From positions 1 to 64,000 of the IMG/VR virus record IMGVR_UViG_3300043446_004613: a stretch of DNA of 64,000 bases. The stretch is one strand, 5' to 3'. The notes under the pieces were generated by a model. The model was given only the letters and a program-made list of their open reading frames with translations, made no database searches and had not been told where the DNA came from. This document shows positions 1 through 64,000 of the stretch, one piece after another (position 1 is the first letter of the stretch; each line of letters starts with the position of its first letter). A program made the position numbers and the translations under genes.

Positions 1-462
1 ATGCACGCCATAGCTGAATACGAAGACTACCTGATCGAGGTTGATCGCCTCATCGAAGCCTGTACCTGCGACTGGTGCGGTGACGTGGCGGAGAAGCCGA
101 TCAAGAAGGAGTGGCTCTGCCGGAAGACCAAGAAGGATACGGTCAAGCATTACAAGTACTGGCGCGTATGCGCTAAATGCCTTTTTGCGGTGAACGTAAG
201 CAGGATGTACAGCAAGATGGTGTTTGATCTGACCGACATCCTCTCAGTTCAACCCATGAGCGTACCTTCCGGCCAGTTATTCTACATGGACTTTGTCCAT
301 ACGGCGCGGGAACCGATTGAGCGGGTAGTGCGACAAGCCATGCCGGGTGTAGACGCACGAGTCACGCGCATCGACGGGCAGAACGGCGAAATCCAAGTGG
401 ATGTAGAAAGCATACCGCCCAAGACGGCGGAGTACATCACTATCGACTACACTATCCCGTGA
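1..462 (+). CDS. Hypothetical Cys-rich protein carrying a gp23-like major capsid fragment and a tail-sheath-like C-terminus (may be 5'-truncated)
   Basis: CxCxxC and CxxC; DILSVQPMSVPSGQLFYMDF resembles the gp23-family motif; the C-terminal GEIQVDVESIPPKTAEYITIDYTI resembles a sheath C-terminus. Confidence 0.6.
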   Translation: MHAIAEYEDYLIEVDRLIEACTCDWCGDVAEKPIKKEWLCRKTKKDTVKHYKYWRVCAKCLFAVNVSRMYSKMVFDLTDILSVQPMSVPSGQLFYMDFVHTAREPIERVVRQAMPGVDARVTRIDGQNGEIQVDVESIPPKTAEYITIDYTIP

Positions 463-8268: not shown

Positions 8269-8497
8269 AAGTTGCTTGGGCTTGAGCCAGAATTAGGTCA
8301 AACATAGCGAAATCAATTTTGTCGGTAGTCGTCTGCACGTATTGGAGCCAAGTGAGCGGACTGCTCACTTGCACGTCTGTCATCGGATAACCGGCTCGAC
8401 ATAGATCATCAATGTATACAACAAGCTGTCTCTTCAGCACTTCCTTTGGCGTTGCCAGTTCGTCGATATAGCGGTCAATGTCCGCGTCCAGATTCAT
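8246..8497 (-). CDS. Hypothetical protein
   Basis: Start reassigned to MNLDAD. Confidence 0.45.
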   Translation of the reverse strand: MNLDADIDRYIDELATPKEVLKRQLVVYIDDLCRAGYPMTDVQVSSPLTWLQYVQTTTDKIDFAMFDLILAQAQATYEYHISR

Positions 8498-9903: not shown

Positions 9904-9911
9904 AGTGATGT

Positions 9912-9939
9912 TGTATACGAAGTAGGTTTCATCGTCAAC
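9912..9939 (-). promoter_or_regulatory. Early sigma70-like promoter
   Basis: GTTGAC-N-CGTATACA with upstream CATTTAGTTCAAATTT. Confidence 0.6.
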
Positions 9940-9951
9940 ATTAAATTTGAA

Positions 9952-10353
9952 CTAAATGATCGGCGTGCTCGTGATCGTAAAATCAAGTTCCGGCCCCGCC
10001 ATGCGCTCCCAGATCACAACACCTTCAGTCCTGTCGACTTCGGTTATGGATACTCCCGGACTGACGTACACTGAATCGTGAATAATTGCAGCGTTCGATT
10101 GCCGCAACGCGGCTGAGAGCAAATTGTCAGCTTGAATTGCGTACATCCGCTGGAGGGCTTGGTCTGCTTCATAACTCCAAGTAGCCTTCAGCTTGCGCGG
10201 GGCAGGTTTAGGTGGAACGTACGTATCAAGCAAATCAGCCACGTATCCGGCGGACGGGTCATCCGACAAGCCGACAGCGTGCTCAGTCCACGTCTTACTC
10301 AAGCGGGCGTGCAGACGGCGCTGGCATGTAACGTGTTTCTTATGGCTATTCAC
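9952..10353 (-). CDS. Paralog A: shared N-domain plus gp23-like capsid fragment
   Basis: GLSDDPSAGYVADLLDTYVPP followed by RKLKATWSYEADQALQRMYAIQADNLLS. Confidence 0.6.
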   Translation of the reverse strand: MNSHKKHVTCQRRLHARLSKTWTEHAVGLSDDPSAGYVADLLDTYVPPKPAPRKLKATWSYEADQALQRMYAIQADNLLSAALRQSNAAIIHDSVYVSPGVSITEVDRTEGVVIWERMAGPELDFTITSTPII

Positions 10354-10573
10354 GGCGGCGGTTCTTAATTACGACAAACGTCTTGCATGCAGACTCATTT
10401 GGCAGAAAGCTGATCACTGCGTCAGGTGGGAAGCCGTCCATCAGTGAAAATGTGACCGGCGGCCTGAGATCATCCAGCAAGTCTAAAACGTAGCACTCAT
10501 CCGGGTTTTCCCGGACGCTGTCGTCCAAGTTGCGCCACTTGCGCTTAACGTCAGTACTGCGTTTCAGGTTCAT
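10346..10573 (-). CDS. Paralog B: shared N-domain
   Basis: SVRENPDECYVLDLLDDLRPP. Confidence 0.55.
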   Translation of the reverse strand: MNLKRSTDVKRKWRNLDDSVRENPDECYVLDLLDDLRPPVTFSLMDGFPPDAVISFLPNESACKTFVVIKNRRRE

Positions 10574-10883
10574 CAAGATCAACTTCTAGTATTGAGCGGT
10601 AACGGGCTGCGTGTTCCCGCAGTGCTTGCTCAGCTGTATCCAGTCCCGCATTAAAAACCTGCTGTCCCAGTTGCGTGCTGCTCATGCCGTACAGAAGGCC
10701 GAAATTCAGAATCTTGTTCAGCTGATGATACGCATCTTTCGGCGGCTTCAGCGTATCAAGCAGTTCGGCGACGTACGTTTCGTCCGGGTCGTCCTTGATG
10801 CCATAGCCAAAGCGCGTCCAGTGCTGGCGCATCCGAGCGCGGAACATAGTGCGCTTATCGCGTCTTTGTCTACGAGTTGACAT
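10551..10883 (-). CDS. Paralog C: shared N-domain plus PolA motif-B-like fragment
   Basis: GIKDDPDETYVAELLDTLKPP followed by KILNFGLLYGMSSTQL. Confidence 0.6.
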   Translation of the reverse strand: MSTRRQRRDKRTMFRARMRQHWTRFGYGIKDDPDETYVAELLDTLKPPKDAYHQLNKILNFGLLYGMSSTQLGQQVFNAGLDTAEQALREHAARYRSILEVDLDEPETQY

Positions 10884-10893
10884 ATTAAAAAGC

Positions 10894-10987
10894 GAGCCTG
10901 CCTAATGCGCACTGCTGACGCGGTTCTGCTTCGCAGGGCGTTTAGAGTCAGGAAACCGCAAAAATTGACTCTGCATCAGGCAGGCTC
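10894..10987 (-). ncRNA. Structured RNA element (15-bp closing stem, two inner hairpins, possible pseudoknot)
   Basis: 10894-10908 pairs with 10973-10987; 10944-10950 pairs with 10966-10972; the loop segment 10954-10959 is complementary to 10920-10925. Confidence 0.5.
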
Positions 10988-11065: not shown

Positions 11066-11227
11066 TCACAGCGGTTTGCGGCGAAGGAGTCCACGAACGG
11101 TTGCAGCGGCCTGCTTGCTGGGATTCGCGAGTGCGTAAAGCGAGTGCTTCAGCCGGGCCATCGGTTTGGGGCTTTTGTTGTGCGCTTTGAGCTTGAGATC
11201 GTTAGGATTGAATTCGGTGACTTTCAT
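11066..11227 (-). CDS. Small basic protein
   Basis: Start MKVTEF downstream of the promoter. Confidence 0.5.
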   Translation of the reverse strand: MKVTEFNPNDLKLKAHNKSPKPMARLKHSLYALANPSKQAAATVRGLLRRKPL

Positions 11228-11249
11228 GGTGTTTAGCTTTCGTAGACGT

Positions 11250-11277
11250 TGTATACAATTTTTCAAGTGCCGTCAAC
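11250..11277 (-). promoter_or_regulatory. Early sigma70-like promoter
   Basis: GTTGAC-N14-TGTATACA. Confidence 0.6.
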
Positions 11278-48767: not shown

Positions 48768-50945
48768 CTAAGCCCTGAATACCTTAGTGCTGGTGTACCC
48801 TTTGCTTGGTAACGGGATGTCCACAGGCGGTGCTTCCGACGACAACTGCACCTGTTGGCCGGTGTAAAGTGTCGGAGAATTCTGGCTCATGATCGTCATT
48901 TTCTCATCCGCGTTGACCGCGTTGAAGAAAGCTCCGGCGGCGGCGTCGGTTGTATCTTTTGACCCGTCTGGCGGATGATCGAACTTCTTATCCATCTCCA
49001 GCAGGTTTTCCGCCTCACGGATCATCTGAGGATTGCGGTGCAGCCGGATGCGGTGTTCTTCAAATCCGGCACGCCAAGCAGTATACACTGACTTGTCCCG
49101 GTCGAGTGACAGCTTGTCGGTAGCAAAGTTTTTAGCCTGAAGTTCCTGAAGGGGAAGTTCGGACTGGTACATGTCCGCCGTAATCAACCCGAAGCGGTAT
49201 CCGCAGACGTCGCGGAGCCAGAAGAAAAAGTCGCGTATCTTGGCGATGCTGATCGGCTTGTTCTGCCCGGCGCAGATTGTCAGGATGAAATCATATTCAA
49301 CGACAAGCCGGTAATCGGAAAAAGGCTGACCGTCGCGTACCAAGCCGTCGACCTTCTGGCTGCCTGCAAGATGGCAGATCGCCACCCCGGCCAGTGTTTG
49401 GGTCGCCAAGTCGATGTGCGCATAACGAAGCGCCTGCGGGTGACGGATCGGTTGGATACGTGAGGATACGCGGGTTAGAAACGTCTTGTGGTTCAGGTAG
49501 TCCCACGCGTGCTTTTTGTCCTCCATGCTCAACGGAATGTGACCGACACCGGGCATGAGCGGATCAGGCACCTTCTCTTCAACCGATACCGCTAGGCAGT
49601 GCTCGATGTCGATTAGGCTTGGGAATAAGCGGTGAGCACCTCCAACGCTGATACCTGACAGGTTTTGCAGCTGCGCTTTGCAGTTACGCCGAAAAGCTTC
49701 GATGTAAAACTTAGGCACCAGTTCCGTCCGTGCGCCGTTAGGCGGCTCTTCGTGGATGTCGGTTCCTATCTTGGAGCCGTCTTCTTTATACCAGCCGCTC
49801 AACATGTACGGCTCCATGTTTTTCAAGCCATACGCGACACGGAACCAGTGATGATCCGGGCCGATACCCGGTAGTGCGTGCCGTTTGATCTTGTAGACGG
49901 CGTTGCGGATGACCAGCTGACTGACCTCTTCTTCGGCGACGCCGGGAGCCAGTGTGCGGTTGTTGATTTCGCGCACGCGATTAGCTTCGTCGATTTCGGA
50001 TACAACCTTTTCAGTGAAGCTCGATTCGTCCGCCGCTGAAGAGGCGATGATGGAGAGCGCCGGAAGAAACGTGGCTACCTTCTGGAAACGGTTGGCGATA
50101 CGTGTGCGCACTTGATCGTAAAGCTCGTACGCTTTCAAGTCCGGGTCTTTTTCCAGACGGAAGTTACCTTCGTCCAGCCCGATACCGACAAGGTTACGAC
50201 CCAGCACGTGCTGGCCTTTTGAACCGGCAGTCAGCCAGATACGCGAGCTTCCGCCGTCAGGCAGGGTATGCTGCATCGGGATGCGGTAGCTGCTGTAATC
50301 GCTTTCCGGGTCAAACCCGCAGATTTCGATGAAATAGGCGCTATCAGCCATGAAGCTCATCGCGGTACCAAACGCGGTATCTTTCACAGCTTCTTTCGTA
50401 ACGGACAGCAGGTTGTATACGATATTGGAGTTACGGTTCAGACCGAAATAGTTCTGCGGATTCTTCAAGAGCGTAGACAGCATCAAACGGTACAGAATCA
50501 GCGTCACCATGATGACAGTCTTTCCGATACCGAGTGATCCGGTGATGACCATGTTATGGATTTTGCTCTCCAAATCCATGTGTTCGTTCAGCAGGCTTAT
50601 CCATGCAGGCCACATGCCTTCGTTTTCACCGGGCACGTGTCGCCACGTCTTTCCGAGGTAAAAATCGTCTTCAATGAACTCCTTGATCGTTGGCGGTTTT
50701 CGGATGTAGTCGAAGTGCCACAGCTGCTGGATCACCGCTTGATCCATCCGCTGGTTCTTGGCAGCCGCTTCCAGCATAGCCTTAGCAATACCTTGCAGGC
50801 GCTGCCATTCAAGGTCGGTCAGCGACGGATCACGCCTATCAAAGATAAACGGGCGCTCGCCTGCCAAGACTTGCTCAGCATGCCGTTCGGCGCGTTCCGT
50901 GGGCATAGGGTGAACCACGGTTTTCTTCTCGTTCGTACCAGTCAT
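48768..50945 (-). CDS. terL: Terminase large subunit
   Basis: Walker A GSLGIGKT, Walker B GIGLDE, RNaseH-like HIDLA, TADMYQS and DHPPDGSKDTTDA. Confidence 0.9.
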   Translation of the reverse strand: MTGTNEKKTVVHPMPTERAERHAEQVLAGERPFIFDRRDPSLTDLEWQRLQGIAKAMLEAAAKNQRMDQAVIQQLWHFDYIRKPPTIKEFIEDDFYLGKTWRHVPGENEGMWPAWISLLNEHMDLESKIHNMVITGSLGIGKTVIMVTLILYRLMLSTLLKNPQNYFGLNRNSNIVYNLLSVTKEAVKDTAFGTAMSFMADSAYFIEICGFDPESDYSSYRIPMQHTLPDGGSSRIWLTAGSKGQHVLGRNLVGIGLDEGNFRLEKDPDLKAYELYDQVRTRIANRFQKVATFLPALSIIASSAADESSFTEKVVSEIDEANRVREINNRTLAPGVAEEEVSQLVIRNAVYKIKRHALPGIGPDHHWFRVAYGLKNMEPYMLSGWYKEDGSKIGTDIHEEPPNGARTELVPKFYIEAFRRNCKAQLQNLSGISVGGAHRLFPSLIDIEHCLAVSVEEKVPDPLMPGVGHIPLSMEDKKHAWDYLNHKTFLTRVSSRIQPIRHPQALRYAHIDLATQTLAGVAICHLAGSQKVDGLVRDGQPFSDYRLVVEYDFILTICAGQNKPISIAKIRDFFFWLRDVCGYRFGLITADMYQSELPLQELQAKNFATDKLSLDRDKSVYTAWRAGFEEHRIRLHRNPQMIREAENLLEMDKKFDHPPDGSKDTTDAAAGAFFNAVNADEKMTIMSQNSPTLYTGQQVQLSSEAPPVDIPLPSKGYTSTKVFRA

Positions 50946-63311: not shown

Positions 63312-63986
63312 TTACGCTTGCGGGACATTTTCCACCTCCGGGGCGTTGATCAAGACCGGTTCGATCCAAGTCAAACGTTTTGGTGACGCATCGTTCCAAG
63401 GCTTCGGGCCGAAGGGTTGATTACGCATGTGGCCGCGCCGCCAGTGCATGCGAGGAGATGCGTGAGCGCCGGGTGCTCCTGAACTTTCGACACGCTGCGC
63501 CTTGTAGTCCCAACCGATGCAGTTCGGCTGCCAAAGTGCTTCCTGTTCAATCGCACCTTTACGGTTGCGCTTTTCCGGGCGCTGCAAGGCTCCAAGCTTG
63601 ATGACATGAGGCCGGGCAGTCATGGCCAACAACAGCTTGATCGCAAACATCTGAACTTTTGCGTTGAACTGCTTATCTTCGGCGTCGGTCGGAAAGCCGT
63701 CACGGCATGCGTTTAGCGTATCCGGTGAAAGTTGCTCTTCAAGATACGTTGCATCTTCAAACGGAGCGCTATCCATGTCGCGGATGTTCATGTGCGTCGG
63801 AAAACTTCCGACATAGTCCATAGGAATAGCGCCGTCGTTTCCAACCACGATACTGACAATATTGATGCGCTCTGACTGGTTATCGATCTTGTTGAGCGCG
63901 TCCAGCGGGATGTCACAGGCAGGCATGTTTTTAAGGCACTGCGGATAAATGCCGATCGGACTGCGCGTAACGCTGATAAATGGCAC
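63312..63986 (-). CDS. Conserved phage protein (SPRxHWRRGH motif); may extend beyond the window
   Basis: HASPRMHWRRGHMRNQ..G...WIEPVLIN. Confidence 0.65.
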   Translation of the reverse strand: MPFISVTRSPIGIYPQCLKNMPACDIPLDALNKIDNQSERINIVSIVVGNDGAIPMDYVGSFPTHMNIRDMDSAPFEDATYLEEQLSPDTLNACRDGFPTDAEDKQFNAKVQMFAIKLLLAMTARPHVIKLGALQRPEKRNRKGAIEQEALWQPNCIGWDYKAQRVESSGAPGAHASPRMHWRRGHMRNQPFGPKPWNDASPKRLTWIEPVLINAPEVENVPQA

Positions 63987-64000
63987 GGCATAGCCAAAGT

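What the first reader, a model, noticed from the sequence alone, without database searches (positions are those of the whole stretch)
9952..10883. Paralog triplet whose common N-domain is fused to fragments of core phage proteins (major capsid, PolA): possible immune decoys
Seen: three tandem small ORFs share W-x5/6-[GS][LIV]-x-[DE][DN]P-x3-YV-x-[DE]LLD-x3-PP. One continues with RKLKATWSYEADQALQRMYAIQADNLLS, matching the gp23-family segment RxLKAxWxxExxQDLxxxHxxDAxxELxxxL. Another continues with KILNFGLLYGMSSTQL..A...L......Y, matching family-A DNA polymerase motif B (K..NFG..YG). They are far too short to be functional capsid or polymerase and lie downstream of an early promoter. Established knowledge: several bacterial defence systems sense capsid or replication proteins. 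Inference: these are epitope-display decoys or sponges that titrate host sensors, or dominant-negative inhibitors of competing phages. The shared DDPxxxYV also resembles the polyprotein linker.
Basis: partly seen in the sequence, partly recalled or inferred. Interest (0 to 1): 0.78.

Follow-up and report, generated by a model that had tools for sequence, protein, structure and literature searches.

The report
Small phage proteins carrying capsid/polymerase pieces
A 211-kb freshwater jumbo phage encodes three neighbouring small proteins that share a unique N-terminal module; two of them end in short, still-recognisable pieces of a major capsid protein and a family-A DNA polymerase, and they look like maintained genes whose job (possibly molecular mimicry) is untested.

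Summary
Three minus-strand ORFs share a ~50-aa N-module: O1 10551-10883, O2 10346-10582, O3 9952-10353. It occurs nowhere else in the ~150 kb of this genome read, and no credible homologue (only repeat-protein artefacts) turned up among 1.84 billion representative proteins.

- O1's tail matches PolA motif B and the helices after it (Pfam 1.7e-4, NCBIfam 5e-4). It does not resemble the phage's own PolA, which I found about 94 kb into the genome.
- O3's tail is a diverged partial copy of the phage's own gp23-type capsid protein, which lies at about 129 kb. O3 residues 54-133 match capsid residues 271-345 (BLASTP 3e-8) and carry clade-specific residues.
- O2's tail matches nothing.

The ORFs look maintained: open despite saturated synonymous divergence, native codon usage, pN below pS.

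A fourth small gene (window 1-462) carries the other highly conserved gp23 block, the region a T4 review describes as Gol, which binds EF-Tu and activates Lit. Similar capsid-fragment mini-ORFs occur in other large phages.

The decoy idea is neither shown nor refuted. The "polyprotein linker" is unsupported and the "early promoter" is unverified. My best guess, at low confidence, is accessory mimic proteins.

The parts
10551..10883 (-). O1: 110 aa from ATG 10883, or 98 aa from M13 at 10847 as gene callers have it. N-module is residues 1-51. The tail, residues ~52-100, is a family-A polymerase fingers segment (motif B / O-helix, KILNFGLLYGMS, and the following helices).
   Evidence: codon usage
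10346..10582 (-). O2: 78 aa from TTG, or 75 aa from ATG 10573. N-module plus a 36-aa tail of unknown origin. Its start overlaps the end of O1.
9952..10353 (-). O3: 133 aa, GTG start, overlapping the O2 stop. N-module is residues 1-51. The tail, residues 53-133, is a diverged copy of residues ~270-345 of the phage's own-clade gp23-type capsid protein. By alignment to T4 gp23 this starts at R264; I infer it covers the E-loop return strand, the spine helix and the next strands.
10731..10847 (-). Conserved core of the N-module in O1. Equivalents are 10448-10564 in O2 and 10201-10317 in O3. It is a basic helix ending in an invariant W, followed by an acidic DDP-x3-YV-x-[DE]LLD-x3-PP helix.
10894..10987 (-). 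Inverted repeat with 15-nt arms in the 182-bp spacer just upstream of O1, followed by a TTTTT run that ends at the O1 ATG. Possibly a terminator, attenuator or structured RNA.
   Evidence: z -3.7; weak Rfam CyVA-1 match, 30.3 bits against a gathering score of 41.4
11248..11259 (.). Copy of the over-represented palindrome TTGTATACAA. A second copy lies at 9910-9921. The two bracket the unit [small ORF 11066-11266 - hairpin - O1-O2-O3].
1..462 (+). ORF-A, a related feature outside the finding: a complete 153-aa gene with a Cys-rich N-part (CxCxxC...CxxC) followed by the N-terminal conserved gp23 block ILSVQPMSVPSGQLFYMDF.
   Evidence: Pfam Gp23 7e-4; own capsid protein, 1e-4; PHROG 138, 0.002

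Best explanation
O1-O3 are expressed, selectively maintained accessory proteins of one jumbo-phage lineage. A lineage-specific ~50-aa N-terminal module (a basic helix with an invariant Trp, then an acidic helix ending in PP) is fused at a fixed junction to a short segment copied from a core protein. In O3 the segment comes from the capsid protein of the phage's own clade. In O1 it is a canonical PolA fingers segment of foreign or ancient origin. O2's tail is unrecognisable.

Most likely they act as molecular mimics. The retained conserved block would engage a factor that normally recognises that block in the full-length protein. That factor would be a host sensor or a host factor such as EF-Tu or a chaperone. 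The mimic would act as a non-productive competitor (decoy or antagonist), with the common N-module supplying solubility, localisation or an inhibitory function.

Shown: the anatomy, the homology, the origin of O3's tail, intact coding status, constraint, and restriction to this lineage. Inferred: expression, binding by mimicry, and the identity of the partner.
For: - Homology of the tails to PolA and gp23.
- O3 shares the clade-specific signature EADQxLQxMYxIxA with capsid proteins of its own clade. It has diverged far more than any orthologue in that clade.
- Synonymous sites between the paralogues, and between O3 and the capsid gene, are saturated (pS 0.58-0.74). pN is 0.36-0.49 in the N-module and in the conserved capsid block, but 0.56 in O3's last 30 codons. 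The constraint is therefore concentrated on the N-module and the conserved block.
- Codon usage is phage-like only in the annotated frames.
- The family looks accessory, not core. No credible homologue turned up among 1.84 billion representatives or 5.8 billion clustered proteins. Yet capsid proteins 73-96% identical to this phage's are abundant, many on 196-246 kb contigs. The flanking glycosyltransferase-like gene also has only distant homologues, 38% identical at best.
- A separate small gene (window 1-462) carries the other highly conserved gp23 block. A review states that the Gol region, the most conserved part of gp23 in its first quarter, binds EF-Tu and activates Lit (PMC3014915).
- Capsid-fragment mini-ORFs recur in other large phages. 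In one 371-kb contig both blocks sit in two mini-ORFs 1.2 kb apart.
Against: - There are no expression data; no RNA run was listed.
- There is no partner and no structure. AlphaFold models are low confidence, with pLDDT 51-55.
- Purifying selection keeps ancestral residues whatever they now do, so retained motifs do not prove mimicry.
- The fragments were found because they kept conserved motifs, so ascertainment bias applies.
- O1's piece differs from the phage's own PolA motif B (NFLTGYGGG in the phage's PolA against NFGLLYGMS in O1). A decoy for the phage's own polymerase is therefore unlikely.
- A true mimic of a trigger could activate abortive infection rather than block it.
- O2's tail has no recognisable source.
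Confidence: 0.3

Rival explanations
1. Chimeric genes in which the fragments are only raw material. The function would lie in the N-module, for example nucleic-acid binding by the Arg/Lys-rich helix with its invariant Trp. That could be regulatory and linked to the structured element just upstream of O1. The C-terminal pieces would be captured by illegitimate recombination and serve only as a stabilising tail, so their capsid or polymerase origin would be irrelevant to function.
For: - The N-module is the only part shared by all three, and it is under constraint.
- O2 has a short, unidentifiable tail.
- O3's last 30 codons evolve almost neutrally.
- A strong hairpin followed by a T-run lies directly upstream of O1.
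- ORF-A and the mini-ORFs in other phages show that capsid pieces fuse to quite different N-parts. That fits frequent fragment capture.
Against: - The conserved capsid block in O3 is as constrained as the N-module (pN 0.36).
- The same two gp23 blocks recur in mini-ORFs of several unrelated large phages and co-occur in L127. That is unexpected if the source of the tail did not matter.
- The junction sits at the same position in O1 and O3.
Confidence: 0.27
2. Inter-phage or anti-host interference. The fragments would act as dominant-negative pieces that poison capsid-protein folding or assembly in co-infecting gp23-type phages. O1 would disturb a canonical family-A polymerase, either the host's Pol I or a competitor's.
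For: - O1's motif B is canonical (NFGLLYGMS), unlike the phage's own NFLTGYGGG, so any target would not be the phage's own polymerase.
- O3's strand RKLKATWSYEA is closer to the general gp23 consensus than the phage's own MKLKTLWSEEA is.
- gp23-type phages occur in the same sample: L085 comes from metagenome 3300046804.
Against: - PolA is a monomer, so a 45-aa fingers fragment has no obvious way to poison it.
- O3's helix carries the signature of the phage's own clade, so it would also interfere with the phage's own capsid protein.
- There are no experimental data.
Confidence: 0.12
3. Helpers or regulators of the phage's own capsid assembly or replication, for example trans-acting folding templates or timing factors that bind nascent capsid protein.
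For: - O3's tail derives from the capsid protein of its own clade.
- By my structural inference, ORF-A and O3 carry the two blocks that pair with each other in the gp23 fold.
Against: - No homologue of O1 or of the N-module was detected in any protein database, although phages with 90-96% identical capsid proteins are well sampled. The genes therefore appear dispensable for assembling that capsid protein.
- O1 does not match the phage's own PolA.
- The genes lie about 120 kb from the head module, in a block of small accessory genes.
Confidence: 0.1
4. Non-functional remnants: pseudogene debris of duplicated capsid and polymerase genes that happen to lie in open frames.
For: - The family is an orphan.
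- The pieces are short.
- The distal part of O3 is almost unconstrained.
Against: - Three adjacent ORFs of 78-133 codons remain open despite saturated synonymous divergence.
- A coding signal appears only in the annotated frame, for both the N- and C-parts.
- Starts and stops overlap, the arrangement is operon-like, and the motif pattern is conserved.
- The region is identical in contigs from different assemblies.
Confidence: 0.08

Closest known systems
T4 gp23 Gol region, EF-Tu and the Lit protease (e14 prophage exclusion)
   Same: A short, highly conserved segment of a gp23-type capsid protein acts on its own as a ligand; a 29-residue Gol peptide suffices (review PMC3014915). By alignment to T4 gp23, ORF-A (window 1-462) carries the most conserved N-terminal gp23 block, which fits the review's description of Gol. 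My identification of that block with Gol is an inference from the description, not from coordinates. O3 carries the second conserved block.
   Different: Gol is part of the full-length capsid protein and triggers defence. Here the blocks sit in separate small genes fused to unrelated N-parts. O3's block, at T4 R264 onward, is not the Gol region. No EF-Tu binding or Lit-like partner was tested.
gp24-type vertex proteins (full-length paralogues of gp23)
   Same: They arise by duplication of the major capsid gene within a phage genome (PDB 1YUE and 5VF3 appear as gp24).
   Different: gp24 keeps the whole HK97-type fold and lies beside gp23. O3 keeps about 80 of 487 residues, is fused to a foreign N-module and lies about 120 kb away. 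No gp24-like gene was seen next to the phage's own capsid gene.
Phage anti-defence proteins that act by mimicry or competition (for example the ICP1 antitoxin mimic of DarG)
   Same: They are small, fast-evolving, lineage-restricted accessory proteins that work by occupying a binding site (review PMC13728456).
   Different: The known examples reviewed there are not described as fragments of the phage's own structural or replication proteins. No fragment-display architecture with a shared N-module appeared in the papers searched.
Small protein families with a conserved N-part and variable C-part in tandem arrays (RiPP precursors, polymorphic toxin or effector families); comparison from general knowledge
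   Same: Tandem paralogues, a conserved N-terminal ~50 aa, a fixed junction (after PP-K-x-A) and unrelated C-termini.
   Different: The C-termini here are recognisable pieces of capsid protein and PolA. No modifying enzyme, secretion or immunity gene is adjacent. Nothing about this comparison was tested.

Membership tests
Gp23 major capsid protein family (PF07068) | The whole protein scores above the Pfam gathering threshold, and the match covers most of the ~376-position profile | tested here: not met
   O3 scores 15.2 bits against a cut-off of 24.4 and covers only profile positions 148-180. ORF-A scores 19.5 bits and covers positions 21-49. For comparison, the phage's own capsid protein carries the precomputed Pfam Gp23 annotation and the LR756511 capsid protein scores 290.9 bits.
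Gp23 major capsid protein family (PF07068) | Sequence homology to a gp23-type capsid protein, i.e. common descent of the matched segment | tested here: met
   O3 residues 54-133 match the phage's own capsid protein residues 271-345 (BLASTP 3e-8). A local HMM of 77 capsid proteins gives E 1.6e-5. O3 shares own-clade residues.
Family-A DNA polymerase (PF00476) | Presence of the catalytic motifs A and C (the carboxylates) together with motif B | tested here: not met
   Only profile positions 209-252 of 381 are matched, corresponding to motif B and the following helices. O1 is 110 aa and has no room for the palm motifs. By my own reading of the alignments, the motif-B arginine is His.
Family-A DNA polymerase (PF00476) | Derivation from this phage's own polymerase gene | tested here: not met
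   The phage's own PolA (L102:14251-17628, Pfam 1.8e-60) has the motif-B region KTVNFLTGYGGG. BLASTP of O1 against it finds no motif-B match. The closest viral or bacterial PolA segments are only 38-50% identical over ~40-50 aa; shorter core-motif stretches reach 52-70%.
Known anti-defence or defence protein families (Pfam Acr families, PHROGs) | A significant profile match | tested here: not met
   O1-O3 give no hits in Pfam, PHROGs or NCBIfam other than the fragment hits. PADLOC was not run.
   This needs co-expression or binding assays. Host and sensors are unknown; the source is a freshwater metagenome.
Arg-rich-motif RNA-binding regulators (lambda N-like; resemblance recalled from memory) | A basic N-terminal helix that binds a cognate RNA hairpin | not tested
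   There is only a compositional resemblance, plus a hairpin upstream of O1. This is a lead, not a test.

The most novel reading that the evidence does not exclude
Jumbo phages may carry a previously unrecognised class of small accessory proteins that display the most conserved segments of core virion and replication proteins: the two gp23 blocks and PolA motif B. These would act as non-activating baits that blind host pattern-recognition defences, or hijack the host factors such as EF-Tu that those segments bind. This phage's N-module family would be one architectural solution, and the Zn-ribbon-like ORF-A and the mini-ORFs of other large phages would be others.
Probability: 0.15. Interest if true: 0.85.

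Novelty: new variant of a known kind. Interest (0 to 1): 0.62.

Why it matters
If these proteins work through the captured blocks, they would be a new counter-defence or host-manipulation principle: fragment display of conserved viral epitopes. They would also point directly to which segments of capsid proteins and polymerases are read by bacterial sensors or host factors.

The hypothesis is easy to test by expression. The survey idea is also cheap: look for small ORFs with sub-threshold hits to core-protein profiles. It already returned further capsid-fragment mini-ORFs in 233-kb and 371-kb phage contigs.

If the pieces are instead only raw material, the locus is still a clean example of how orphan phage genes can be built from fragments of essential genes and then kept for a long time.

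Tried and rejected
- **Homing endonuclease, intron or intein remnant.** No endonuclease domain is found in the neighbours. No group I or II intron match in the window passed E 0.01. L048, which looked like a split capsid gene, has no other capsid exon within 3 kb and no intron hit.
- **N-module derived from the phage's own PolA exonuclease N-terminus.** BLASTP gave a suggestive alignment at E 1.3, but the N-module profile does not hit PolA. Rejected.
- **'Polyprotein linker'.** The representative search hits P0003, P0004 and P0006 are large repeat proteins with LSDDPDETYVASI in each repeat. Their significance comes from summing about 9 short stretches, and this is not homology.
- **Neighbouring 66-aa ORF as a tubulin fragment.** Pfam Tubulin_C gave E 0.014, but the ORF has no match to the phage's own tubulin. 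Rejected.
- **A genome-wide habit of fragment ORFs.** Small ORFs searched against the phage's own large proteins give only noise apart from O3 and ORF-A.
- **Comparative dN/dS with orthologues.** This is impossible because no homologues exist. All other contigs are 100% identical across the locus.
- **Expression evidence.** No RNA run was listed.
- **Structure.** Both AlphaFold models are low confidence, so I ran no fold search on them.
- **ESM Atlas.** The look-alikes for O3 (PQQ-repeat clusters, score 0.84) are below a meaningful level.
- **One wasted scan.** reused the same peptide pattern.

Full report
**What is there**

The window is the first 64 kb of a 211,113-bp viral contig, IMGVR_UViG_3300043446_004613. 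Window coordinates equal contig coordinates. The only sequencing runs found to hold it are from a freshwater metagenome. Three minus-strand ORFs lie head to tail with overlapping stops and starts:
- O1: 10551-10883, 110 aa. Gene callers start it at M13, giving 98 aa.
- O2: 10346-10582, 78 or 75 aa.
- O3: 9952-10353, 133 aa, GTG start.

Their first ~50 residues are paralogous. BLASTP gives O1/O3 7e-13, O1/O2 5e-9 and O3/O2 5e-5. Invariant residues are W22, P33, Y37-V38, L41-L42-D43 and P47-P48. The motif occurs exactly three times in the six-frame translation of the window. A profile of the module finds no further copy in the ~150 kb of this genome that I could read. AlphaFold models are low confidence (pLDDT 51-55). 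They agree only on a long basic helix, a short acidic helix, and helices in the tails.

**The tails**

O1 residues 55-99 match Pfam DNA_pol_A positions 209-252 at E 1.7e-4. Three NCBIfam Pol I models hit at 5e-4 to 6e-3. Of 19 weak PDB hits, 18 are Pol I or Klenow, aligned to Klenow-chain residues 432-477. An alignment with real polymerases shows the match running from the RQxAK position through NFGLLYGMS to the ...Y... helix. The motif-B arginine is replaced by His, which is my reading of that alignment.

O3 residues 53-85 match Pfam Gp23 (0.015) and PHROG 138 (0.017). They are 52% identical to a bona fide gp23-family capsid protein of the 595-kb phage LR756511, with RKLKA.WSYEA.Q matching at 11 of 13 positions. 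A local HMM built from 77 gp23-type capsid proteins scores O3 at E 1.6e-5 against 1,877 six-frame ORFs.

O2's 36-residue tail matches nothing.

**The phage's own genes**

I walked along overlapping contigs and found both core genes.
- The phage's own family-A polymerase is L102:14251-17628, 1,125 aa, Pfam 1.8e-60, at about 94-97 kb.
- Its own gp23-type capsid protein is L108:12138-13601, 487 aa, annotated Pfam Gp23, at about 129 kb. It lies next to an S77 prohead protease.

O3 residues 54-133, the whole tail, align to capsid residues 271-345 at 33% identity over 80 aa (BLASTP 3e-8). The capsid protein has many relatives at 73-96% identity, a dozen of them on contigs of 196-246 kb. O3 shares their clade-specific signature EADQxLQxMYxIxA, which is absent from the other gp23 clade examined. 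O3's tail is therefore a strongly diverged partial paralogue of the capsid protein of its own clade. By alignment to T4 gp23 it begins at R264. From general knowledge of the fold, I infer that this is the E-loop return strand followed by the spine helix.

O1 is different. The phage's own polymerase has KTVNFLTGYGGG at motif B, and BLASTP finds no motif-B similarity to O1. The closest viral and bacterial polymerases are only 38-50% identical over ~40-50 residues. Shorter core-motif stretches reach 52-70%. All of these matches lie in full-length polymerase genes.

**Are they genes?**

- A codon model trained on 18 confident genes of this phage gives 0.15-0.30 bits per codon in the annotated frames of O1, O2, O3 and ORF-A. 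This holds for the N- and C-parts separately. All five other frames score negative, except one reverse frame of ORF-A at +0.025. Confident genes score 0.23-0.39.
- Nei-Gojobori counts show saturated synonymous differences (pS 0.58-0.74) between the paralogues and between O3 and the capsid gene. pN is 0.39-0.49 in the N-module, 0.36 in O3's conserved capsid block and 0.56 in O3's last 30 codons.
- Three ORFs staying open through that much divergence, with constraint concentrated on the N-module and the conserved block, argues against neutral remnants.
- No orthologues exist to refine this. The only matches were the phage's own proteins, plus repeat-protein artefacts, among 5.8 billion clustered proteins, among 1.84 billion representatives searched exhaustively with the N-module profile, and in IMG/VR. 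A metagenome scan found none.
- Contigs from other assemblies are identical across the locus.
- The flanking 336-aa glycosyltransferase-like gene also has only distant homologues, 38% identical at best. The locus therefore sits in a lineage-specific accessory region.

**Beyond the finding**

The first gene of the window (1-462, + strand, 153 aa) is complete, and it is called identically in a contig that extends upstream. It joins a Cys-rich N-part to the N-terminal conserved gp23 block. Evidence: Pfam Gp23 7e-4, PHROG 138 0.002, own capsid protein residues 96-138 at 1e-4, and HMM positions 66-108. By the T4 alignment this block is gp23 ~V99-Y131.

A review describes the Gol region as the most conserved part of gp23. 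It lies in the first quarter of the protein, binds EF-Tu and thereby licenses the Lit protease (PMC3014915). I infer that the two are the same region. That rests on the review's description, not on coordinates.

The only four differences between the two assemblies in 10.9 kb fall in this gene: three synonymous and one A63T.

Searching this gene's peptides in IMG/VR returned only small ORFs in other contigs (11 kb, 233 kb and 371 kb), not capsid genes. Each has the same ~45-aa block and unrelated flanks. In the 371-kb contig a second mini-ORF 1.2 kb upstream carries capsid-HMM positions 241-304, the same block as O3. A further contig has a 97-aa ORF that is a pure fragment of that block (Pfam Gp23 7e-21, profile 134-202). 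It sits between a helicase and a MerR-HTH serine recombinase. These searches were motif-driven, so the choice of blocks is ascertained. The co-occurrence in L127 is not.

**Interpretation**

- Close relatives with near-identical capsid proteins appear to lack these genes, so a role in the phage's own capsid assembly is unlikely.
- Neutral debris is unlikely because the ORFs are intact and constrained.
- Two readings remain: mimic proteins acting through the captured block, or N-module proteins for which the tails were merely building material.
- I favour the mimic reading slightly. The constraint includes the conserved capsid block, the same two blocks recur in mini-ORFs elsewhere, and one of them appears to be a documented ligand and trigger. 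Confidence is low (0.3), and no partner is known.
- The immune-decoy version is plausible background-wise. A preprint links capsid-protein escape mutations to several defence systems and reports that Borvo senses the phage DNA polymerase. It is weakened for O1, because the piece is unlike the phage's own polymerase and Borvo escape mutations map to the exonuclease cleft.
- The 'polyprotein linker' remark is unsupported.
- The 'early promoter' is unverified. No sigma-70-like site lies upstream. Instead there is a strong hairpin plus T-run directly before O1, and copies of the over-represented palindrome TTGTATACAA bracket the unit.

**Limits**

- About 63 kb of the genome (roughly 138-201 kb) was not read.
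- The host is unknown.
- There are no expression data and no reliable structure.

Noticed in passing
window 1-462 (+): A complete 153-aa gene joins a Cys-rich N-part (CxCxxC...CxxC) to the N-terminal conserved gp23 block ILSVQPMSVPSGQLFYMDF. I infer this block is the T4 Gol/EF-Tu-binding region. All four differences from the JGI assembly in 10.9 kb fall in this gene (3 synonymous, 1 A63T).
   Followed up: partly
L127:1259-1618 and L127:2501-2755; L126:2216-2692; L125:2216-2674; L048:2956-3249: Other viral contigs (371 kb, 233 kb, 11 kb and 26.7 kb) carry mini-ORFs that contain only one conserved gp23 block with unrelated flanks. In L127 the two blocks lie in two mini-ORFs 1.2 kb apart and in non-collinear order. 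The L048 fragment (Pfam Gp23 7e-21) lies near a MerR-HTH serine recombinase.
   Followed up: partly
window 10894-10987 (-): An inverted repeat with 15-nt arms forms a long branched hairpin, followed by TTTTT directly before the O1 start codon. Folding z-score is -3.7. There is a weak full-length match to Rfam CyVA-1 (30.3 bits, gathering score 41.4), which does not survive a whole-window search. The element is unique in the window.
   Followed up: partly
window, e.g. 11248-11259, 9910-9921, 8411-8422, 50412-50423: The palindrome TTGTATACAA is over-represented: 47 matches at up to 2 mismatches against 13.7 expected, reached by 0 of 100 shuffles. Some copies lie just upstream of small genes. It could be a phage promoter or operator.
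   Followed up: no
window 63312-64000 (-), continuing to about 64385 in L099/L100: A 357-aa gene carries a precomputed Pfam AcrVA2-like (PF26125) annotation.
   Followed up: no
L101:18034-19164; L105:18288-19058; L108:10406-12100; L102:14251-17628: Genome content beyond the window includes a tubulin/TubZ-like gene, a T4 gp13-like neck protein and an S77 prohead protease next to the gp23-type capsid gene. It also includes a 1,125-aa PolA with an unusual motif B (NFLTGYGGG), DnaB, an NAD-dependent ligase and a RecA-like protein. The phage therefore has T4-like head genes although the ten largest window ORFs gave no capsid or other structural-protein hit in PHROGs (E 1e-5) or Pfam (E 0.01); only a NUDIX domain and three sub-threshold Pfam matches appeared.
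   Followed up: partly
upstream of several genes (own capsid gene, tubulin, SNase, gp13-like): AACTAC/GTAGTT-type short palindromic words sit just before the start codons. Shine-Dalgarno sequences are largely absent from the genes inspected.
   Followed up: no
window 11066-11266 (-): The 66-aa ORF just upstream of the hairpin gave a weak Pfam Tubulin_C hit (E 0.014). It shows no similarity to the phage's own tubulin, so the hit is probably chance.
   Followed up: yes
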